DNA of 64,000 nt from Dimorphilus gyrociliatus (GCA_904063045.1 CAJFCJ010000020.1:1542916-1606915); one strand, 5' to 3'; shown: positions 1-10,042, numbered from the stretch's first letter. Program-made: numbers and translations. Notes: generated by a model not told the origin, from the sequence alone.

Positions 1-3000
1 CGGGAGAGGGTTCTCTTGCTCCAGTAAAGATTAAAGGAACTTTGTTATTGGGCCACATGTCATTGATCAATCTGTTGAAGTTATTTGTAAATTAAATGAT
101 TTATTATAAAGTTTTCATTAAAATATAAACCTACCGTATGAGCATGAGTGTATTCTTTTCATTGTCAATACAAGGCATAAATGAGTTTCTTATTGCAATT
201 ACTATTGCCTCATCTTCATCTTCTCCGTTAAACTCTTCCAACAAGATACCTGCTTCCATAGCTATTGCTTTCAGAGCTAGCTGTGACGGTCTAATATCAT
301 CTATTAAGTCTCTTATCAGTTCTAATAGATTGGTTGTCTTTCTCGCCAATTGCGAGGCATTTTCAAAACCCTGAGATGTTAAAAGAACTTCTGTGTATAG
401 TCGTAGATTTGGCGGAACAAGTGATACCACTCTAAAATGATCCAAAAGCTCAGCTGGAAGTGGAACAACTTTTGGAGCTGAAATATTTTTTCCAGGTGGT
501 AGACCAAGAACAGATGATTTGTCGAATACTTTTTTTGTGTCCATAAGAGCGAAGCATGCTCCTAGTTTATTAAATGGTACATCCATTGATTCAATGTGGA
601 CACTTGACTTTTCCTCTTTGTATGCTTCTCTTATAGCATCAAGTAACTGGGCAAACGTTGCTAGAACGGGAACAGGTATAAGATTGATTTTATTCCAAGC
701 CATCCACGCTCCTGCACCACAAAAACCCTTGAAAACATTATATAACAGAGCAGAAGTGGTGTCTGAACAACAACTCATAACATAAAGAGGTCTGCCAAGA
801 GATCTTGCCAATTCCGTAACTGTTTCTAGCTTTCCGGACCCCTCTTCACCAATTAACAGTCCACCAAGTTGCCCTGCTATGGCTTGAGCCATATGAAGAA
901 ACACCCTCTCGGTGTGAGGAGTTAAAATTTGCCTTTGAGCTGAGCCCATGTATTCAAATCCATATTCTAATTCAACATCGTGAACTCTAATGACAACTGA
1001 ACGGTTTCCTTCGTTGAAGGAATACAAGAATTGAGATGTCCAAAGGAAAGAGTTATTTATATTTGAGTTTCCTGCTTTTTGTTCTTCTTTTATTCTTTCA
1101 AGGAGATTTTTATGATGAGTTAATAAAGCAATTATGGACTGAATTTTATGTAACTGAGCTGGCAATAGCATTAATTTAATTTCTTTATCATCAATAACTT
1201 CCTCTTCTTCCTCGTTGTCCTTTTCAGAAATAAGAGGAGGTTCTAATGCTGTAAGAGTCATAGTTGTTTCGCCTTTTTCAGGCGACTTTTTAGACTTTTC
1301 TTCACCTTCTGGATCTTCTTTTTCTTCATTTTCTTCCTGCTTTTCTTCTTGATCTTTAGCCTCTTCCTGCTCCCTTTTAGCTCTCTCTTCTTCACCTTCC
1401 GCTCCCTTAAGCATAAGAACAGTGTGGCGGATATTCTCTTCAACTAAAGTTAAAGATTCATCAATACTATCCGGTTTACCTCCGTCCAAATTCTCCACAG
1501 TTTCGGTGGCTGATTGAGATAATTCTATCAACTTGGAGAGGTATATAATTTCTGTAACATGATTTAGTAACAAAGAACCAGCCTCTTCTACTTCTGGTTC
1601 TTCTTCTTTTTCCTCAATGGCAGGAGTCTTTTGACCAGTTGTTGGAGTTTTTTGACCAGTTGCGGGAGTCTTCCTTCCCGCTGCCGTACTTGCTCTTCCA
1701 GCAGTACTCGATCTGCCAATGGCTGGAGGTGGCACTGTTTGAATTATTTTCTTTTTCTTAGGTCTAATTCGTCTAAATTCTGGAATTGGTTCCAGTTGAA
1801 GAGCTGTAACCATTTGGCCAACAAGACTCTTTCTCATTCCCTTAAATAATTGTAGTAACCAAGTTTCAACTGGAGAATCAGTTAAAACTGGTTTTTCTAT
1901 GGGTAAGCGCTCACCAAGAGCAGATAAAACAGACGTTATTTTCGATCCAAATTTATCTTCATCTGTAAGAATTTCGTGTTCAATTCCACCAATTCCTTCA
2001 AATAGTTTGTTAAGATATTTAGCAGCTTCGGAAACATCATAACCATTGGCAACAATATGAAAGACATCCGGAAGAGAAAGGAAAAAAAACCTTGGAAATT
2101 TTTGACGCCTCCTCTCGATATGTCTCAACAGAGCGTTATAGCATTTTTCAAAAGTGTTAACAAGCCTTTCAAGTAAGCTTGCAACATGTTTACGTTCGCA
2201 ACATTGTAAGACATTCGAATTCTTTTCCGTTGCTTTCATCAATAATCTAAAATCTTTACTTGCTGTTGCGAAATGTGCTGAATCAGTCGGTAAAGCAGTT
2301 CGAACATCTTGAGAGGAATAAGCTTCCTCCAATTCGACCCAGTATTTTTGGGCTTTTAGCCAATCAGAAAGTACCGATTCAATTGTATGAAGGCGGCGTT
2401 GCCACTTGAGGACCTCATCAAGAAAGCTACCAGCAGCAGAGGATGTTTGCATAGCTTGTAAAGACACTTGATGATTTTCCAATTCATCTAGTATTGGATC
2501 AGTATTGGTGAGTAAGTATACAGCTCCAGTATCCTAAAATTATTGATAGGTAAGAATTTAACAAATTAAATGAGATTTATCTATAAACTTACGTCAACAT
2601 TTAGCATAGAAGCAGGTAAAGATGATACAGAAGCCTTTCGCATTCTAGAGGCTGTTGTACCAGACATTCGTGAATATTGTCTTGATCCTCTCTCAGGTTG
2701 TGAAACTTCACTAAAAGTATCACCTTCTCTATTATTAGATTCTTTGGTCGACGATTCATAATGAGCAATAAGTGCTCGATTTCTAGCATGTTCTTTTAAT
2801 TCTAATAATTTACCTAACCAAATTTCCTCATACGTTTTCAATGTCTTCTCAACTGTGAGATCTTTCACAGCTCTTTGGACAATAGCACGAACATCTTCTG
2901 AATGTCTGTGTAAATTCATACCTAACAATTCACCAAATGTCATTTTCTTCAATTTTTCATTGTCAACCTATCAAAAATTAAATAAATTATATTCCTATAT

Positions 3001-6000
3001 AAAAATTGTACTAAAGTTACATGAAGAGCTCCTCCTGTAACTCGAACAAGTTGTTTCCAATGTCTAGTTCTCATAGCTGGATTGCCTAATAGTTCAACAA
3101 GTGGGAGACCGGCATGAACATTTGAAACATTTTCGTGAAGCCCCACATAAACGTCCCAGGCAAACACATCATCAGGTAAATTGTGAATAAGTTCCATTTG
3201 TTTAGTAATTTCATTATGCAATAGTTGAGTATCAACTTTAGTCCAACGTAATTTTTTCCATTCATTTTGCTCTTCTTCAATACTTTTTACCCTTTTCCAT
3301 ACAATTCTCAAGTTATTTAATAAGGTAGAACAGTTCGGTATTATTTGAAAATTTACAACATCACTTTCAAGTAATTGCTGCAATTCCTGCAGATCGGATG
3401 CTTCTTTTTCTAAGAGATCCGCTCTCATAGTTAATCTATAATTCAATTGATAAAATTTAGGATAAAACAATGATCATGTTAAAATAAAATGATCTAATTA
3501 CCTATCAACAGTTTTCAAAGCATCATCAAAGTGAATTTCTCGATGATAGACGTCACTTGCTAAAATATCTCTTTGGAGACTTTTTAGCTTTTCAGAGAAA
3601 ACATTTAAGTCTTCCGTAATGATTGTAGATTGCTGTTGAATTCTTGGTCCAAGTCTTTGTTTGGCCAGAGAAACTTTCGTCTTCAGGCTGGCCCAACGAG
3701 ATGGTGCTGCCTCAAACAAGTCAAAAGTTGGTTTCGGTAGATGATAACCATACTTTTTCACCAATAAAACGGTTCTATGCATTGCTGCAAATTTTGCATC
3801 CATATCTGCCTGTTTTGCTGCAACGCTATTGAACAATCTCATTAGTTTCATAAAAGAGTTTGTGTCCGATTCTTCGCCCGAAATTGCTTCAATTTCTGGC
3901 TCTATCCTACATAGCCATTCATCCAGTTCCATTAGCATAGTTGACACCTGATTGACGAGATAAGAAACAAAAATCCACATCCATTTTGATGCTAGTGTTA
4001 ACAAGACTTGTTTTATAGGTCTCATGTCAACTTCTATGAATCCGATAGATTCGCTATCAGATATTCTAGAAATTTCATCCTTGGCTGTTCTATGCATATC
4101 TATCTCAGTATCAAACTGATCCAAAGTTGGCACTTGAGGATTATCTTTTGATAAGAAAGCTTGTTCTCCTGTACCTATAAGACCTGACTCGACAATAGAA
4201 GAAGTTGACGATGTTGATCTTACTGCAAGTCTCACCGAACTAGATGCTGAAAGTACTCTTCTTGCCGAACCTTCCCTCCTAACATTTGGATGAATGTCTC
4301 CTTTTAGGAATTCCTTGAACGTTTCATGAACGTCTTGCATCCAAAGGAACGAAAACTGATTGAATGTTGCTTGCAATTTTGAGCATTCATCGCAGTTGTC
4401 TCTAACAATTCTCTTAATTTGACTTATCTTACTTTGCAGATCCGAATCGTGTCTTATAAAGTCTTCAAATGTATGTTCTCGGTCACTAAGCATGTAAACG
4501 TATGATCCTCTTTCTAGGTAGGATTCAATCCAAGAGTTTATTGTTTCAGGCACACTTTTTGAAGCAGTTGCAACATCCAAAGGAGGTCTAAAAGCTACCT
4601 GATTATCAATTAATTCTAATCTGATAGATATAACTGGAGCTCCTATAACATCAGGTTCACAGCACATTGCAAATTCAGTAATCATGGCTTTAATGCTACA
4701 ATCACATGCAGCTTTTAGTCCGTTAAGTACCTGAGTATCTATAAAATCAACGTAAGCTTGCCACGCGGGAGACGCTTCGCTTATTTGAACTACTTCAAAT
4801 GATTCTTTAAGAAGGGCATGAATTTTCATACCTCCGGTAACTATAGAACTCCTTGCAGAATCGCTTATATGGGATTGTTTAGAAACAAGATAATCGACAC
4901 TTAAAGCTTCAGGATCTCTATCACTAAAAACATCTAAAGATAATCCAAGCCAACTGGTGGTTATGTCGATGACAGCTTCATAGTTGCTCTCAACTATATC
5001 CAAAACATCATGAAATTGATGACAAACGAGGCTAGTTGCATCTTCAATATAATCGGCACTCTGAACTGTCCTCCAAGTATACGAATGAAGACCGTCTTCA
5101 AGGATTCCATCAATTTTCGTTAATGTCCTCTCCATCAAAGATTTTGTTTGGGGTGTCAACATTTTCATGGCAGAATTATACTTTGATGAAATGGTATGTA
5201 GTCTTGTGGCTGTTAAAGATAGTTCAGATGCGTCAACATCTCTAACAAGATGACGTATATGTCTTGGTATCTTTAGATCTAATGGACTACTAGTCAGATG
5301 TTTAACTTCTCTCAACAATTTTAACAATGTAGGATCAAGATTTACATGAATCATTAATGGTCGATCTAATTCATCATCTTCAAATGGGTCGGTACGGAGA
5401 AGTGGTTCGCGAAGGCGTTCAGCTAATTCCTTGGAAATACGTTCCTCCCAATCTTTTGCAGTATCTGCTTCATATTTCTCAATATCATTGATAAGATCAT
5501 TATAAGCGTCACGCAAAGCCCATCCCGAATCTCCATTTAAGACATGAGAGCATACACGACGCATTCTCGACATTGGTTCTTGAATTCTCTGCCTAATAGC
5601 CCATGCCCAGAGTAAACTTGAAGAGGTTTTAGGCGTGTTAACATGCTGAGGAGGATTATCTTTGTTAGCTTGGAACATTTCTTTCACATTAATTAATTCA
5701 TCTGTTAAACTTCTTGCAAGTGTTTCATCTTTATCCTGAAAAAAAATCGAATCAAATTAAATATTAACATTATACCAATTCTTAAGTTTCACATACTTTC
5801 AATTCTAGTCGAACGTGTTCTCTTTCACTAACTCCTTCAAATACTTCTAATAATCTCAGTTGAGCGTATAAAGTGGGGCAGTGTAAGAAGGCTGATCGAA
5901 GAACACTGGCTAATTTTCTCTCTAGATCTCTAACGCTCATTCGTAAATGGAAGAAAGCTTTGTTGAATGTTGGTGAAAAAGTATCAAGAACATCGTCGAC

Positions 6001-8398
6001 TTTTGAGAAGAACTCGTTGGTTGATTCGACATATCTCTCATGTATTTCTTTAACGAGTGCGTCCAGAGACCTACTTCCGGCACCTCCAACTTTGGCAGCA
6101 TCAGCTAAAAGTGAGAAATGTCTTGTTGTTTGAACCAATTCGAGCACGTCATTACATCTTTCCATGAAAGCGTTGAGATTGGAGAAGCATGGGGCGTTTC
6201 TTGGCGGCCAAGGAGAGTCCGATTTTGTATCATTGTCTCCTGTTTTTGATTTTTCCTCTGAAAATAATCAATTACACGATATTTATTAAATCATAGATAA
6301 ATCAAAGCAACACTCAATTTTACCTCTTCCGCTATTGAAGCTTGGTTTATAAGCATGTGGTCCGTACATCTTGGTTGTAAAGAGGCCACTAGATAGGGAT
6401 GGTCTGAATACGTAATCGTCTTTTCTTTGTAGTTTGTTTCGTTCATTTATTTCATGTGCTCGGTCCCTCTCATCTAGGTATTTACCTCTCCAGGAAGCAC
6501 AGACGCGAAGGGCAGAGCTCAACTTGGAATGAGATGTAACAGGATCCTTAAGAACTTCTTGCCCAACGATACATCTAGCCCTAATAACAACATGATTAGA
6601 GATTAGAGTTAGCAAATGCTGGAGTCTTTCGGGGGCATGGTAGTAGGGCGAGTTTTGCCAAATTAACAAAAGAACATGCATTGAGGGTGCCGCCAATTTC
6701 ATTAATCGATCCACATTTTCACAAGAATCGAGTTCAAGCACCCAACGTTTTATGGTGTGGAGTAGAGTTAGATTTTCTGTAACAAAATGAAAGTGCCCTT
6801 CCATTTCCTCTTGAACTCCAGCAAAGGAGTGTGCGTAAACGCTCTGGGCTTGGAAAAGATTATGAAGAATGTCCACACCCATTGATCCTTTTAGTTGGTC
6901 ATTTATTGATTGCAGGAGACGTAATTTATTTTGCCAAAATCTAATCTCATCAAGAATTGTTGGTAAGTTATGCTTTGAGCTTACCTCCATGACTGCATCT
7001 TGCTTCAATACAGCCTGTATAACACAATAGACAAAAGATATTACTTTTGTTTTAAAATTTGACTCTTATTTAAGTTCATACAAACATGAATTTGTTTCAT
7101 CCAGAGTATAACTGTGGATTCTAATACATGGATAACAGCCAGTCTTCTATTCGGATTTGCCGCCGCCTCTTGAAGAACGGATATGGATGGCAATGGTAGA
7201 TAGATTTCACCCAACGAATGGCCTTGGGCTATTTCAACATGAGCCATAAGCCTATGAAGCACATCTAATAGTTTATCAGCATTAACTCCAAGATCGTTAG
7301 CATTTTTCGCATCCGAACATAGCAGTGGAAGAAATACTTCACGGCAGAGCATCTCGACATGTTCCAATGAATTAGGTGAGCAGTCCATAAACATTATTTC
7401 ATTATCTAAATTATGCTTTGTAATAGTAACGCCTGTACTAGCTTTCAGGAAAAATATTGCCTTATTTTGTATAGAATTTGGAGGATTGAGAGATGCTATC
7501 AATTTTTTATTAGGCCTAGTGACTACGAATAGTTTTCGGATGTCTTCATTGGTAAAAAATGTATGGAAAGCTAACCTGTGAAATTGAACATTTGCATTAA
7601 AATATGATGATAGATTAAAGAGGTAAAAATTGGGGAAGGAAAGTCCCCATTGATTTGAATTTGATAGAATAAAGATTCAATGGGAATAGGAACTTTAAAC
7701 TCAATTAGATCTATTTCCCAAACCGAATTAACTAATTTGCCATTTGACTAGAGGTCTAAAGTCACTATTTAATTACTATAAATTAATAATCTAAATAAGA
7801 AACCTGAATTCAAAAATAATGAAAGCCCATTGACTATCTTGATAAAATAAAAGTCAAATTATATATTTATAATTAACGGTCCATTTCCCCATCTTCTTGA
7901 AATCTATAATTATTTAGACCAGAATGAAAAATAACAAAAATAGATATTTAGATTTAATTAAGGTATTCTTTTTTAGAATCAAAAAATTCGATTTTTTTTC
8001 CCTTAACATTCTAATAGGTTTATTTTCCCCTTTATATTTCTATATTTATAGATATTTTAGAGAAATGTATAAACTTATCCTTATTTAAATCAATTAGTTA
8101 GAAATTTAATATTCAATTATTCTGTATTCACTAGTAAATTCATTAATTTAATTTTTTTTTTAAAGAATTTTACTGCATAGGTGCCCCGTCTATAATTTTC
8201 GGCTGCTACAAAATAAAACTTAGGCCTACTTTAATGACAACCAAGGTAAAATTAAATAAGTATAGATTTTTGATAATATCCTTACCGATTATCATCATCA
8301 GCGATCATATTTTTAAGTTCTTCATTCCTTGGTTTCAGGGAAGAGGCTATCCTTGCCTCTAACCATTTGATTTTTTCGTCAACTTCCAAAGTAGACAT
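1..8398 (-). CDS. Axonemal-type dynein heavy chain-like protein (N-terminal tail, DHC_N1, DHC_N2/linker, AAA1); multi-exon, continues off the left edge of the window
   Basis: First exon 8398-8286 (MSTLEVDEKIKWLEARIASSLKP..., donor CG|GTAAG) splices in phase 2 to the exon starting at 7575 (G TTA GCT TTC...). ORFs 7041-7502, 6286-7008, 5782-6165, 3498-5687, 2949-3470, 2581-2952 and 131-2482 are further exons. Dynein motifs: EIRFWQNK, LLGNPAMRTRHWKQL, RRQKFPRFFFLS, LEYGFEYMGSAQRQILTPHTER, P-loop GEEGSGKLET. Confidence 0.9.
1615..1725 (-). repeat. Short coding tandem repeat (21-nt unit, KTP[A/T]TGQ) inside the dynein linker insert
   Basis: + strand shows repeated tttgaccagttg with ggagt spacers; protein GRSSTAGRASTAAGRKTPATGQKTPTTGQKTPAI. 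Confidence 0.8.
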
Positions 8399-8989
8399 AA
8401 CGAGTATAATATTTGATAAACGAAATTAAAAAACTCTAATGATAATCATAAATATTCTTAGTATTCATAAGAAAGTTTGATTTATTCGAAAAATATATTT
8501 ATTGCTAAAATAATCAACAATCTTTTTCAAATTCCAGTAAAATTCATCGCCATGTTGTTAGTTGCGGCGTTGTTATGGGGACGATCTAGGCCTGATCATA
8601 GAAATAAAATACGGTCGTCTTTCTTTTGTTGTCCCCCTAATAGATATTTATGTTTAAAATATGATGTTTAGAGGCTAAAAAATATTTAATAAAAAAATAT
8701 AAATATATTATTAAAATAATAGTGAAATGAAATAGATCCAAAGATACGTTTACAGTACTGCATTTGAGCAATCAACCATAGTAGGCCTAATATTCAATAC
8801 ATCTTGTCTTAATACTAGTAAATAATTATTTTTATCTTTAAATGATTAAGTAAGTAAAAATGAGGATTACATCATTATTTATAATTATAATGGCAGTACA
8901 AATAAAAAATGGAGCATTATCGATATAATTTACAATTTTGTTTTTGATTCTCCTATATCATATATAATAAGTTATTTGCTTATTACAGG

Positions 8990-10042
8990 ATGGGTGATGA
9001 ATATTACTCAACTGTTGTTGATTCGTTCCCATGGACTATTAGGAGGTGCTATTATGATTTAGAAAAAATAGGTTGTAGTTCTCAAAGTCTTGTTTGTTTA
9101 GCGTCTAATGGTCATTTTGGTAAAGTTGCTGTTAAGAAACTAATTAAACCGTTTGATTCGGAAAGCTGTGCTAAAAGATCTTGGAGAGAAATTGTTATTC
9201 ATAAACATTTAGCGAAATCTTCCCATCCACATATCATAGGTCTCATAGAGAGTTTTACTCCCGATTCAGGCCTAGAGTTATTTAATAATGTATATATTGT
9301 CACCGAATATATTGGCAAAGATTTAGAACAAGCTCTTAAGAAGGTTGGGAAATATGATGAAACAGACGCTTTAAAAATCATTGGCCAAGTTTTGAGTGCC
9401 TTGGCCTATTTACATTCTGCAGGTATATTACATAGAGATCTTAAGCCAAGTAATATTGCCATAAGTGATAATTGCTATGTAAAACTTTTGGATTTCGGTC
9501 TGTCAAGAACAAGCGCTAGTGAAATGTCTGGCTACGTAATAACGAGACCTTACAGAGCTCCAGAGGTAATATGCAATTGGACGCATTATAAGTCAAACGT
9601 AGACGTTTGGAGTGCTGGTTGCATTCTAGCTGAGATGCTTACCGGCGAAATTCTATTTAGAGGAGACACTTTAGTAAAGCATTTCCAAAATATTATAAAA
9701 TTCGTTGGTAAACCAAACGAAACAGTACTTTCTAAAATAATATCTATAAATGCAAGAGAATACATAAAAACACTTCCCGATGAACCACCAGTCAATATGA
9801 ATGAATATTTTCATGGAAAACATTACCTTGTAATTGAATTACTCAAAGAAATGCTAAACTTTGATTCCGAAACAAGAACTTCAGCAGTCGATACACTTAA
9901 TCATAAAAGCTTCGACTATTTCAAAGCAAAAGCCTATCAGGCGACTAAAAATTTCTCTTGCCCTATATTAGATTGTCAACTGGAAGAACAATCTAAAAGT
10001 ATTGATGACTGGAAAGAACTAGTTTGGAATATCTGTCAATAA
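8990..10042 (+). CDS. Divergent p38-like MAP kinase, copy 1 (single coding exon, 350 aa)
   Basis: VAVKKL, AKRSWRE, HRDLKPSN, DFGLSR..EMSGYVITRPYRAPE, DVWSAGCILAEM. The KKL..PF.S...AKR..RE and EM[T/S]GYV signatures are p38-type. An acceptor-like ttacag lies immediately before the ATG. Confidence 0.9.
   Translation: MGDEYYSTVVDSFPWTIRRCYYDLEKIGCSSQSLVCLASNGHFGKVAVKKLIKPFDSESCAKRSWREIVIHKHLAKSSHPHIIGLIESFTPDSGLELFNNVYIVTEYIGKDLEQALKKVGKYDETDALKIIGQVLSALAYLHSAGILHRDLKPSNIAISDNCYVKLLDFGLSRTSASEMSGYVITRPYRAPEVICNWTHYKSNVDVWSAGCILAEMLTGEILFRGDTLVKHFQNIIKFVGKPNETVLSKIISINAREYIKTLPDEPPVNMNEYFHGKHYLVIELLKEMLNFDSETRTSAVDTLNHKSFDYFKAKAYQATKNFSCPILDCQLEEQSKSIDDWKELVWNICQ

What the first reader, a model, noticed from the sequence alone, without database searches (positions are those of the whole stretch)
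680..850. Dynein heavy chain with a catalytically dead AAA1 (pseudo-motor)
AAA1 is the main ATP-hydrolysis site of dyneins. Here Walker A reads GEEGSGKLET (827-850; canonical GPAGTGKTET), so the Mg-binding Thr is replaced by Leu. Walker B reads GAWMAWNKINLI (NK at 689-694; canonical GAWGCFDEFNRI), so both acidic residues, including the catalytic Glu, are lost. The sensor-I FITMNP equivalent reads FALMDT. Three independent lesions sit in an otherwise intact, multi-kb open, well-spliced gene, which argues for a maintained non-motor (structural or regulatory) dynein heavy chain, possibly DNHD1-like or a distinct lineage. The motifs are seen in sequence; the loss of ATPase activity is inferred.
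Basis: partly seen in the sequence, partly recalled or inferred. Interest (0 to 1): 0.7.

Follow-up and report, generated by a model that had tools for sequence, protein, structure and literature searches.

The report
Dead-engine outer-arm-type dynein (class 13)
This is an intact 12-exon gene for a giant dynein motor protein whose main ATP engine lost its catalytic residues before corals and bilaterians split; it keeps a strongly conserved microtubule-binding stalk, and it belongs to an animal-wide dynein family that was catalogued in 2016 but whose ATP sites were not analysed then.

Summary
On the minus strand the AAA1 Walker A reads GEEGSGKLET (821-850), Walker B reads GAWMAWNKINLI (677-712, NK at 689-694) and sensor I reads FALMDT (536-553). 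All 16 canonical dynein genes of the same genome keep GPAGTGKTE / GAWxCFDEFNR.

The gene is not a pseudogene. Twelve GT-AG exons add up in frame to 5,238 aa, or 5,717 aa with a terminal acidic exon, and they are collinear with orthologues.

It is not DNHD1-like. It belongs to a well-separated family of 5,100-6,500-aa heavy chains found from corals to frogs. That family is sister to outer-arm dynein beta (DNAH9/11/17) and fits Kollmar's 2016 "class 13".

- **AAA1:** 0 of 57 family members keep the Walker B glutamate.
- **AAA4:** the P-loop is lost in all 16 members examined.
- **AAA2 and AAA3:** the P-loops are conserved in those 16.
- **Stalk:** the 371-aa stalk and microtubule-binding domain has almost the same length (369-377 aa) in all 56 members that align over it. 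It is the best-conserved part of the protein.

It is probably not DNAHX, the non-motile dynein described in a 2025 preprint. A second gene on contig C7 fits DNAHX, and an earlier scan report (s1-080754) filed a gene on another contig under DNAHX.

Best reading: a microtubule-binding heavy chain that generates no force, possibly the partner of DNAHX. It is a new member of a known kind.

The parts
8286..8398 (-). Exon 1, start codon at 8396-8398
   Evidence: Residues 1-40 of the Owenia, Littorina and Lineus orthologues align here. The donor is CG|GTAAGG. Splice sites are inferred from GT-AG and reading frame, not from RNA.
7086..7575 (-). Exon 2 (N-terminal tail)
   Evidence: tblastn with orthologues. 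The acceptor is CACAG|G and the donor is CAT|GTTTGT, chosen because only this pair keeps the frame.
6324..7014 (-). Exon 3 (tail, DHC_N1 first part)
   Evidence: Pfam DHC_N1 positions 18-215, E=7e-31. Junctions.
5797..6257 (-). Exon 4 (tail, DHC_N1 middle)
   Evidence: Pfam DHC_N1 positions 222-340, E=3e-18. Junctions.
3502..5735 (-). Exon 5 (tail; end of DHC_N1 and coiled coil)
   Evidence: Pfam DHC_N1 positions 359-562. Against solved structures it matches DNAH9 at 7.6e-59 and DNAH5 at only 4.8e-8, so the tail is of outer-arm beta type.
3021..3435 (-). Exon 6 (linker, DHC_N2 start)
   Evidence: Pfam DHC_N2 positions 3-106. Junctions.
2593..2967 (-). Exon 7 (linker)
   Evidence: Pfam DHC_N2 positions 114-174. 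Junctions.
135..2533 (-). Exon 8: end of the linker, a low-complexity insert, and AAA1
   Evidence: Pfam DHC_N2 positions 184-400 (E=3e-56) and AAA_6 positions 1-254 (E=1e-42). The exon is collinear with the Pleurodeles and Batillaria orthologues, insert included.
1151..1798 (-). K/E/T-rich stretch between linker and AAA1 that does not align to canonical dyneins: 216 aa here against 74 aa in canonical outer-arm beta
   Evidence: BLASTP against the bivalve outer-arm beta chain P0291. Orthologues carry a stretch at the same place.
821..850 (-). AAA1 Walker A, GEEGSGKLET: Lys 2161 is kept, Thr is replaced by Leu 2162
   Evidence: Across the family this column holds T or S in only 4 of 57.
677..712 (-). 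AAA1 Walker B, GAWMAWNKINLI: Asp is Asn 2207, the catalytic Glu is Lys 2208
   Evidence: Across the family Glu is present in 0 of 57, and the Asp column is Asn in 42 of 57.
464..553 (-). AAA1 sensor I, FALMDT (Asn is Asp 2258), followed by a family-specific loop of about 15 aa
278..280 (-). Codon at the AAA1 sensor II arginine position; it reads Leu (about residue 2345)
   Evidence: HMMER alignment to DNAH17. The column varies across the family: Q, K, H, R or L.
1..71 (-). Start of exon 9 (end of the AAA1 small domain, then AAA2). The gene runs on outside the window for about 19.5 kb.
   Evidence: The acceptor is CAACAG|A at 71.

The rest was read from G000:C20: L033 8638-10000, 6447-7908 and 756-6379, then optionally L031 8425-9877.

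Best explanation
This is the Dimorphilus orthologue of an old, animal-wide dynein heavy-chain family. The family derives from, or is sister to, the outer-arm beta chain (DNAH9/11/17). It matches Kollmar's 'class 13'.

**Shown**
- The gene is intact: 12 exons giving 5,238 or 5,717 aa.
- The tail is of outer-arm beta type.
- AAA1 has lost the Walker A Thr, both Walker B acids, the sensor I Asn and the sensor II Arg.
- The AAA4 P-loop is also lost.
- The AAA2 and AAA3 P-loops are conserved.
- The stalk and microtubule-binding domain are canonical in architecture. Their length is nearly fixed across the family, and they are its best-conserved part.

**Inferred**
- The protein cannot run the AAA1-driven power stroke, so it generates no force.
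- It is built into a two-headed, outer-arm-like complex through its tail.
- It binds nucleotide at AAA2 and AAA3 for structure or regulation.
- Its selected activity is microtubule binding through the stalk that AAA1 no longer releases: a tether, brake or regulatory head.

**More speculative**
- Its partner is the class-12 / DNAHX heavy chain, which is also encoded in this genome.
For: **Full dynein domain set.**

**Gene model.** Twelve GT-AG exons sum to 15,698 nt plus either ending, always in phase. The model is collinear from residue 1 to the C-terminal domain with mollusc, annelid and nemertean orthologues.

**A discrete family.** Relatives score at least 1,991-2,338 bits. Outer-arm beta scores at most 933-1,229, and outer-arm alpha about 640. 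The careful PMSF tree gives:
- family 100/99;
- this gene inside the lophotrochozoan subclade 100/99;
- family with outer-arm beta 100/98.

**Tail.** DNAH9 7.6e-59 against DNAH5 4.8e-8.

**AAA1 across 57 family members.**
- Walker B Glu 0 of 57.
- The Asp column is Asn in 42.
- The Walker A Thr column is T or S in 4.
- 291 of 302 other dyneins are KT / DE / N.

**Other ATP sites.** The AAA2 and AAA3 Walker A motifs (G-x-x-G-C-G-K-[ST]) and the AAA3 VDDLN are conserved in the 16 members examined. The AAA4 P-loop is lost in all 16.

**Stalk and microtubule-binding domain.**
- Pfam MT domain, E=4e-31, with no net insertion.
- Length 369-377 aa, mostly 371-372, in the 56 members that align over it.
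- 55-61% identical to molluscs, the brachiopod, Owenia and Lineus, 48-49% to corals, about 40-46% to amphibians, and 25-29% to ordinary dyneins.
- The AlphaFold2 model (pLDDT 83.7) shows a 102-residue helix, six short helices, then a 109-residue helix.
- That model matches solved dynein stalks.

**Class-13 hallmarks.**
- Extra 155 aa and 97 aa around AAA5.
- An in-frame low-complexity terminal exon.
- Low-complexity tails in orthologues.
- Hallmarks as described in PMC5100056.
Against: - Expression, the splice sites and the choice of 3' end are therefore unverified.
- No enzymology exists for any member. Loss of ATPase is inferred from motifs, and AAA3 still looks competent.
- The terminal branch of this gene is long (1.04 against about 0.3 for Owenia and Lineus). 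This suggests relaxed constraint outside the stalk.
- The class-13 assignment rests on the paper's verbal description, not on comparison with a class-13 reference sequence.
- Placing the family outside all outer-arm beta chains, protist ones included, may be a long-branch effect. The time of origin is therefore unsure.
- The partner idea rests only on tail homology, co-occurrence in one genome and similar reported distributions.
Confidence: 0.75

Rival explanations
1. The gene is itself the annelid orthologue of DNAHX, the non-motile heavy chain found in sea-urchin sperm (XP_041462850; Chai et al. 2025 preprint). On this reading the preprint's placement next to outer-arm alpha is a long-branch artefact.
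For: Shared traits:
- length over 5,000 aa;
- a degenerate AAA1;
- the Walker A Thr replaced;
- a similar distribution (cnidarians, molluscs, ray-finned fish, frogs), with no amniotes among the hits.

The S. purpuratus family member P0280 has Val at the GK-T position, at residue 2236. The preprint gives V2221.
Against: - The preprint places DNAHX beside DNAH5/8. This family sits with DNAH9/11/17 by tail score and by tree.
- DNAHX numbering runs +233 from DNAH8 at all four sites, so it has no indels. P0280 has 30 extra residues between sensor I and sensor II, and it keeps the sensor II Arg.
- DNAHX keeps a Walker B; this family never does.
- DNAHX has stalk, microtubule-binding-domain and AAA4S inserts of varying length in every species tested. 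This family has a stalk of nearly fixed length and no room for an AAA4S insert.
- A different gene of this genome (C7, L037-L039) is sister to outer-arm alpha at 100/99, has DNAH8-like spacing, and has no detectable Pfam stalk domain.
- No Lytechinus protein of 5,272 aa appeared when a crinoid family member was the query.
Confidence: 0.12
2. The gene is still an active motor. ATP turnover at AAA3, or a non-canonical AAA1 chemistry, drives a modified mechanochemical cycle. This would match Kollmar's suggestion that the new classes evolved 'new force production characteristics'.
For: - AAA3 Walker A and Walker B, and AAA2 Walker A, are strictly conserved in the 16 members examined.
- The AAA1 Walker A Lys is kept in 49 of 57.
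- The linker, stalk and C-terminal domain are present.
Against: - In every dynein studied, AAA1 hydrolysis is required for motility. This rests on established knowledge of cytoplasmic dynein Walker B mutants, not on a test made here.
- No family member has the catalytic Glu.
- Echinoderm members have also lost the P-loop Lys, and corals and frogs the AAA2 arginine. No common AAA1 chemistry survives.
- AAA3 of axonemal dyneins carries DD like this one and is regarded as regulatory.
Confidence: 0.07
3. The gene is a decaying duplicate (pseudogene in the making) of the outer-arm beta gene, specific to this fast-evolving worm.
For: - The terminal branch is long.
- Identity to canonical outer-arm beta is only 22-33%.
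- Much of the protein is low-complexity insert.
Against: - About 15.7 kb of coding sequence is open, including single exons of 1,874, 799 and 744 codons.
- All 11 introns are GT-AG and in phase.
- Orthologues exist from corals to frogs, and their tree follows the species tree.
- The stalk is 55-61% identical to molluscs and other lophotrochozoans, and the AAA2/AAA3 P-loops are intact.
Confidence: 0.02
4. The gene is the orthologue of DNHD1 (Kollmar class 11).
For: DNHD1 is also reported to lack the Walker B catalytic residues and to carry disordered inserts.
Against: - No protein named DNHD1 appears among the relatives, and no mammal has a family member in the lists.
- The tail is clearly of outer-arm beta type.
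- The genome holds a third, much more divergent heavy chain (C7:2.29 Mb, L024) that is a better DNHD1 candidate.
- No DNHD1 reference sequence was compared directly.
Confidence: 0.02

Closest known systems
Dynein class 13 (DHC13) of Kollmar 2016, Mol Biol Evol 33:3249 (PMC5100056)
   Same: - Restricted to metazoans.
- N-terminal tail like the class-4 (outer-arm beta) dyneins.
- Longer AAA5.
- Unique low-complexity C-terminal extension.
- A bona fide, undisrupted gene.

All four structural features are seen here.
   Different: Nothing contradicts membership. No reference class-13 sequence was at hand, so the match is to the description only.

The paper states that the ATP hydrolysis and microtubule-binding sites were not analysed. 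The following points are therefore not in that paper:
- the dead AAA1 and AAA4;
- the conserved AAA2 and AAA3;
- the highly conserved stalk of nearly fixed length.
DNAHX (sea urchin XP_041462850; Chai et al., bioRxiv 10.1101/2025.01.18.633724), probably Kollmar's class 12
   Same: - A giant heavy chain of outer-arm type.
- AAA1 motifs degenerate and variable between species.
- Many disordered inserts.
- Found in aquatic invertebrates, non-teleost fish and amphibians, but not in amniotes.
- Proposed to be non-motile.
   Different: - DNAHX derives from outer-arm alpha (DNAH5/8); this family goes with outer-arm beta.
- DNAHX keeps Walker B and the DNAH8 spacing; this family has lost Walker B and has a sensor I insert.
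- The DNAHX stalk and microtubule-binding domain are disrupted by variable inserts, and it has an AAA4S insert. Here the stalk is the best-conserved part, nearly fixed in length, and there is no AAA4S insert.
Outer-arm dynein beta heavy chains (DNAH9, DNAH11, DNAH17; Chlamydomonas beta)
   Same: They are the closest canonical relatives by tail (DNAH9 7.6e-59), by whole-length score and by tree. The domain order is the same.
   Different: - Canonical beta chains are about 4,450 aa with intact AAA1 (KT / DE / N) and AAA4 P-loops. The genome has its own canonical copy on C18 (L009, L035).
- This protein shares only 22-33% identity with them.
- It is about 800-1,250 aa longer.
- It lacks the AAA1 and AAA4 catalytic motifs.
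DNHD1 (Kollmar class 11)
   Same: It is an 'orphan' metazoan heavy chain reported to lack the Walker B catalytic residues and to carry disordered inserts.
   Different: It is a different lineage and is present in mammals. There is no sign of orthology here. The L024 gene of this genome is the likelier counterpart.

Membership tests
Dynein heavy chain | Tail (DHC_N1), linker (DHC_N2), six AAA modules, coiled-coil stalk with microtubule-binding domain, and C-terminal domain, in that order | tested here: met
   Pfam hits in order along the exons: DHC_N1, DHC_N2, AAA_6, AAA lid, AAA_7, AAA_lid_1, AAA_8, MT, AAA_9, Dynein_heavy (below its cut-off), Dynein_C.
Dynein class 13 (Kollmar 2016) | N-terminal tail homologous to class-4 / outer-arm beta tails | tested here: met
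   Tail exon against solved structures: DNAH9 7.6e-59, Chlamydomonas beta 3.4e-49, DNAH5 4.8e-8. In the tree the family groups with outer-arm beta at 100/98.
Dynein class 13 (Kollmar 2016) | Longer AAA5 domain | tested here: met
   Relative to the bivalve outer-arm beta chain P0291 there are about 155 extra residues before AAA5 and about 97 within or after it. Both are acidic and low in complexity.
Dynein class 13 (Kollmar 2016) | Unique low-complexity C-terminal extension | tested here: inconclusive
   Orthologues end in 350-550 aa of S/K/E-rich sequence.

Here a GT donor lies 5 codons before the stop. It joins in frame to a 484-codon E/T/S-rich exon (L031 8425-9877), and the total is then divisible by 3.

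No RNA evidence was available, so use of this exon is not shown.
Dynein class 13 (Kollmar 2016) | Restricted to Metazoa | tested here: inconclusive
   All named family hits are animals: corals, an acoel, echinoderms, amphioxus, tunicates, molluscs, an annelid, a nemertean, a brachiopod, sturgeon, gar, lungfish and amphibians.

The searches were word-seeded and listed only the best 120 hits, so absence elsewhere is not proven.
Dynein class 13 (Kollmar 2016) | Groups with reference class-13 sequences (CyMoBase) | not testable with these tools
   No reference class-13 sequence could be fetched.
DNAHX (Chai et al. 2025) | Branches from outer-arm alpha (DNAH5/8) | tested here: not met
   This family goes with outer-arm beta. 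The C7 gene goes with outer-arm alpha at 100/99.
DNAHX (Chai et al. 2025) | Inserts in stalk CC1/CC2 and in the microtubule-binding domain that disrupt microtubule binding | tested here: not met
   - The Pfam MT domain is matched over positions 18-340 by 324 residues.
- The family-wide length is 369-377 aa.
- The AlphaFold2 model shows a regular stalk that matches solved stalks.
DNAHX (Chai et al. 2025) | Folded pre-sensor-II insert (beta-hairpin plus helix) in the AAA4 small domain | tested here: not met
   Between the AAA4 alignment blocks there are at most about 34 residues for 18 reference residues, part of them intronic read-through. No insert of that kind fits.
DNAHX (Chai et al. 2025) | AAA1 site spacing identical to DNAH8 (V2221, S2322, K2393 = DNAH8 + 233); Walker B present | tested here: not met
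   The sea-urchin family member P0280 has V2236, then S2335 (99 residues on), then the sensor II Arg (a further 101 on). Its Walker B reads FNNLAHI.

The XP_041462850 sequence itself was not available.
DNAHX (Chai et al. 2025) | Unusual length (over 5,000 aa) and poorly conserved AAA1 motifs | tested here: met
   5,238 or 5,717 aa. Both families share these traits.
Canonical outer-arm beta (DNAH9/11/17) | Intact AAA1 catalytic motifs and placement inside the beta clade | tested here: not met
   The motifs are lost. The family forms a separate clade at 100/99, outside the beta clade that holds the genome's own canonical copy L009.
DNHD1 (class 11) | Closest relatives are DNHD1 proteins; present in mammals | tested here: not met
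   No DNHD1-named protein and no mammalian family member appears. No direct comparison with a DNHD1 sequence was made.

The most novel reading that the evidence does not exclude
Class 13 is the unidentified second heavy chain of the sea-urchin 'dynein-X' particle.

On this reading animals from cnidarians to amphibians keep a complete 'shadow' outer dynein arm. It is a heterodimer of an alpha-derived head (class 12 / DNAHX), with a dead AAA1 and a wrecked stalk, and a beta-derived head (class 13), with dead AAA1 and AAA4 but a highly conserved working stalk. Only the class-13 head would hold the microtubule.

**Facts that fit**
- The outer-arm alpha-like and beta-like tails.
- Both genes lie in this one genome.
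- The distributions look alike.
- The second head of dynein-X has a canonical extended stalk and no AAA4S insert.
- Sea-urchin mass spectrometry lists a minor 'DNAH9' (3.18%). NCBI gives that kind of name to class-13 proteins of other species.

Kollmar suggested a 12+13 heterodimer in 2016 from the tails alone. The link to dynein-X, and the two heads dividing the work between them, would be new.
Probability: 0.35. Interest if true: 0.7.

Novelty: new member of a known kind. Interest (0 to 1): 0.5.

Why it matters
Dyneins are defined as ATP-driven motors, so heavy chains kept for over half a billion years without a working main ATP site ask what else a dynein head is for.

**What this gene adds**
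- The beta-derived class 13 is catalytically dead at AAA1 and AAA4 throughout the family, like the alpha-derived DNAHX.
- Unlike DNAHX, its stalk and microtubule-binding domain are under the strongest constraint of the whole protein. That points to ATP-independent or AAA3-gated microtubule binding as the selected activity.

**A testable candidate**
- It offers a concrete candidate for the unknown partner in dynein-X.

**The fertilisation idea**
- The family occurs in salamanders and in several gastropods listed. This worm carries both class 13 and the DNAHX-like gene.
- To my knowledge, not tested here, these animals fertilise internally.
- If so, the preprint's link between such dyneins and external fertilisation is weakened.

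For annotation, these genes are currently named 'dynein beta chain-like', 'DNAH9-like' or 'uncharacterized'. Those names hide the family.

Tried and rejected
1. **Word search with the AAA1 exon.** It gave one hit only, the Batillaria fragment. The hit was still useful as a first orthologue.
2. **AAA1 domain alone as a probe for orthologues.** Canonical dyneins outscore vertebrate family members there, so AAA1 is a poor marker of orthology. The tail, linker and stalk are good ones.
3. **DNAHX identity.** This was my working idea. I dropped it after the numbering test, the stalk test and the tree.
4. **Solved structures.** No chain stood out above the ordinary dyneins as a close relative of this gene or of the C7 gene.
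7. I corrected two errors in the region size of a search.
8. **Mislabelled tree rows.** Two sequences that I had labelled by search rank as outer-arm alpha (Willaertia, P0261) and beta (Gonapodya, P0230) fell with DNAH2. Labels taken from rank are unreliable. This does not affect the result.
9. **dN/dS.** Not attempted. The nearest available relatives are other phyla or distant annelids, where synonymous sites are saturated.
10. **Joined model not searched.** Every exon was handled by reference on its own, and the joined step was left out.
Full report
**What is at the coordinates.** The finding lies in a minus-strand gene. The reverse strand of window 1-2400 reads GEEGSGKLET at 821-850, GAWMAWNKINLI at 677-712 (N-K at 689-694) and FALMDT at 536-553. 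The exon holding them matches Pfam DHC_N2 (E=3e-56) and AAA_6, the AAA1 model (E=1e-42). HMMER alignments to solved dyneins put the three strings on GPAGTGKTET, GAWGCFDEFNRI and the FITMNPGY region.

A six-frame scan of the window's own assembly (78 Mb, 349 contigs) with the AAA1 model found 19 heavy-chain loci. Sixteen of them carry GPAGTGKTE[TS], and GAWxCFDEFNR wherever the motif lies in the fetched frame. This gene and two others on contig C7 do not.

**The gene is whole.** The window starts inside the gene, so I fetched the adjoining DNA of contig C20. Pfam finds the rest in order: AAA2 with lid, AAA3, AAA4, the MT stalk domain (E=4e-31), AAA5, AAA6 and the C-terminal domain. A single 1,894-codon open frame is among them.

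From GT-AG sites and reading frame I built a 12-exon model.
- In the window: 8286-8398, 7086-7575, 6324-7014, 5797-6257, 3502-5735, 3021-3435, 2593-2967, 135-2533 and 1-71.
- Continuing in L033: 8638-10000, then 6447-7908, then 756-6379.

The phases agree at every junction. A GT donor sits five codons before the stop. It joins in frame to a 484-codon E/T/S-rich exon (L031 8425-9877), giving 5,238 or 5,717 aa. Mollusc, annelid and nemertean relatives align collinearly from residue 1 to the C-terminal domain. In the model's numbering, Walker A is K2161-L2162, Walker B is N2207-K2208, sensor I is D2258 and sensor II is L2345.

The splice sites are inferred. 

**Relatives.** A word search with the AAA1 exon gave a gastropod fragment (Batillaria). 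It has the same insert between linker and AAA1, Walker A GPKECGKFSH and Walker B GCWVSFTDIANL. The exhaustive HMMER search put two very long proteins on top, from a salamander (5,410 aa) and a lungfish (5,930 aa), ahead of ordinary dyneins. The salamander protein aligns across the whole exon, insert included, with GPEGSGKRST and GAWICFNGLEQL.

Word searches seeded with the salamander protein and with a crinoid protein revealed a discrete family of 5,100-6,500-aa proteins:
- corals and an acoel;
- crinoids, starfish and a sea urchin (S. purpuratus XP_011660868, partial);
- amphioxus and tunicates;
- many molluscs, the annelid Owenia, a nemertean and a brachiopod;
- sturgeon, gar, lungfish, salamanders and some twenty frogs.

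Family members score at least 1,991-2,338 bits. The next proteins are DNAH17/11/9 at no more than 933-1,229 bits, then DNAH5/8 at about 640. No amniote, teleost, insect or nematode member appeared. These lists are word-seeded and capped, so absence is not proven.

**Placement.** The tail exon matches DNAH9 at 7.6e-59 and DNAH5 at 4.8e-8. I built a careful IQ-TREE PMSF tree of the linker-AAA1 region (49 rows, 774 columns). It used single exons or open frames for the genome's own genes. The results were:
- the family is monophyletic (100/99);
- this gene lies inside its lophotrochozoan subclade (100/99);
- the family groups with outer-arm beta (100/98);
- within the family the branching largely follows animal phylogeny.

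The terminal branch of this gene is long (1.04).

**The ATP sites across the family.** For 57 family sequences:
- the Walker B Glu column never holds Glu (G 25, N 20, D 6, others);
- the Asp column is Asn in 42 and Asp in 5;
- the Walker A Thr column is T or S in 4, two of them the corals with GKTET;
- the P-loop Lys is kept in 49.

The sensor II Arg and the AAA2 arginine that faces AAA1 vary between lineages; here they are L and H.

In the 15 relatives examined plus this gene:
- AAA2 Walker A (GxxGCGK[ST]) is conserved in all;
- AAA3 Walker A (GExGCGK[ST]; here GANGAGKT) is conserved in all;
- the AAA3 VDDLN motif is conserved in all;
- the AAA4 P-loop (canonical GVGGSGKQS) is gone in all.

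Loss of the Walker B acids therefore predates the cnidarian-bilaterian split. The other AAA1 residues then drifted.

**The stalk is the conserved core.** Identity to the scallop orthologue varies along the protein:

| Region | Identity |
|---|---|
| Tail | 47% |
| AAA1 exon | 34% |
| AAA2 to AAA4 | 42% |
| AAA4 small domain, stalk and microtubule-binding domain | 57% |
| AAA5 to C-terminal domain | 30% |

The 371-residue stalk segment corresponds to spans of 369-377 aa, mostly 371-372, in the 56 family members that align over it. It is 55-61% identical to molluscs, the brachiopod, Owenia and Lineus, 48-49% to corals, and about 40-46% to amphibians. It is only 25-29% identical to ordinary dyneins.

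AlphaFold2 with 34 family rows gave pLDDT 83.7. The model has a 102-residue helix, six short helices, then a 109-residue helix. Foldseek matched the model to dynein stalks, including the crystal structures of the entire stalk at TM 0.70-0.73 by target.

Relative to canonical outer-arm beta the extra length lies in three places:
- between linker and AAA1 (216 aa for 74);
- before AAA5 (about +155 aa);
- within or after AAA5 (about +97 aa).

**Comparison with what is known.** Two papers bear on this.

Kollmar 2016 (PMC5100056) defined three metazoan classes.
- Class 11 is DNHD1.
- Class 12 has a tail like DNAH5/8 and 'an extremely unusual stalk' without a typical microtubule-binding site.
- Class 13 has a tail like outer-arm beta, a longer AAA5 and low-complexity C-terminal extensions.

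That paper proposed that classes 12 and 13 form an outer-arm-like heterodimer. It also states that the ATP and microtubule-binding sites were not analysed. This gene fits class 13 on every described feature.

Chai et al. 2025 (bioRxiv 10.1101/2025.01.18.633724) described DNAHX from sea-urchin sperm as follows:
- non-motile and derived from outer-arm alpha;
- an AAA1 with a Walker A Thr-to-Val change but Walker B present;
- residue numbers offset by a constant +233 from DNAH8;
- variable stalk and microtubule-binding-domain inserts and a folded AAA4S insert;
- a two-headed 'dynein-X' in which the second head is unidentified, has a canonical stalk and lacks the AAA4S insert.

This gene fails the DNAHX tests. 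It has beta rather than alpha affinity, a stalk of nearly fixed length, no AAA4S insert and no Walker B. The sea-urchin family member P0280 has 30 extra residues between sensor I and sensor II and keeps the sensor II Arg.

A different gene of this genome (C7:1.248-1.268 Mb) fits DNAHX / class 12.
- It is sister to outer-arm alpha at 100/99.
- Its AAA1 spacing is DNAH8-like.
- Its Walker A reads GGPSYGKTDT and it keeps an acidic pair at Walker B.
- It has no detectable Pfam stalk domain.

An earlier report of this scan (s1-080754) filed a gene of about 5,340 aa on another contig under DNAHX. That agrees with my reading, but I could not confirm that it is the same locus. I could not fetch XP_041462850 itself, so I leave 0.12 on the rival that this family is DNAHX. 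No paper in the library uses the class-13 name after 2016 or describes its ATP sites.

**How it most likely works.**

*Shown:* an outer-arm-beta-type tail, no catalytic AAA1 or AAA4, conserved AAA2/AAA3 nucleotide sites, and a canonical, strongly constrained stalk and microtubule-binding domain.

*Inferred:* the protein enters a two-headed complex through its tail, cannot perform the AAA1-driven power stroke, and binds the neighbouring microtubule through a stalk that AAA1 no longer releases. It would act as a tether, brake or regulatory head, perhaps gated by AAA3.

*More speculative (0.35):* it is the missing partner of DNAHX in dynein-X. The class-12 head would be the locked, non-binding one and the class-13 head the microtubule-binding one.

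**Verdict.** 'DNHD1-like' is rejected. The 'distinct lineage' is real but already catalogued. This is a new member of a known kind, with family-level details that appear to be undescribed: dead AAA1 and AAA4, live AAA2 and AAA3, and a stalk under the strongest constraint of the whole protein.

Noticed in passing
G000:C7:1248600-1267650 (loci L037:3638 to L039:2650; also L023): A second giant divergent heavy chain in the same genome.
- It is sister to outer-arm alpha (DNAH5/8) at 100/99.
- AAA1 Walker A reads GGPSYGKTDT and Walker B reads GCWGLIEDIQ.
- It has an insert of about 75 aa between linker and AAA1.
- No Pfam stalk (MT) domain is detectable between AAA4 and AAA5.

It fits Kollmar's class 12 and the DNAHX preprint better than the gene of this finding does.
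   Followed up: partly
G000:C7:2289687-2293340 (L024): A third, very divergent heavy chain.
- The AAA1 P-loop is degenerate (SGKGFGSSST).
- Walker B reads FFDDME.
- A long insert lies inside AAA1.
- The AAA2 P-loop is intact (GIGGSGKTT).

In the tree it attaches to the base of the class-13 family on a branch of 2.26, which may be long-branch attraction. It is a candidate DNHD1 / class-11 gene.
   Followed up: partly
L031:8425-9877 (G000:C20:1531340-1532792), minus strand: A 484-codon E/T/S-rich open frame that can be spliced in frame to the dynein's last exon. It contains three tandem copies of a unit of about 27 aa (TRKEDDNPETLGETPAPESPTKELTGA). It is probably the family's low-complexity C-terminal extension. 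Read-through instead ends the protein after 5 more codons.
   Followed up: partly
window 8399-8989: About 590 bases separate the dynein start codon (minus strand, 8396-8398) from the start of a p38/MAPK-like kinase open frame on the plus strand (8990-10042). The two genes are head to head and may share a promoter region.
   Followed up: no
Proteins P0189, P0190 (corals) and P0177, P0178, P0272, P0273, P0280 (echinoderms): Within the family the AAA1 Walker A decayed stepwise.
- Corals still read GKTET.
- Most bilaterians keep GK but replace the Thr.
- Crinoids, starfish and the sea urchin have lost the Lys as well (NSR, NRR, SGR).

Nucleotide binding at AAA1 is therefore not a conserved property of the family.
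   Followed up: partly
Public annotation of family members: Members are named 'dynein beta chain, flagellar outer arm-like', 'DNAH9-like', 'Dynein heavy chain 14' or 'uncharacterized protein'. A minor 'DNAH9' in proteomic lists of species that have this family could be a class-13 protein.
   Followed up: no
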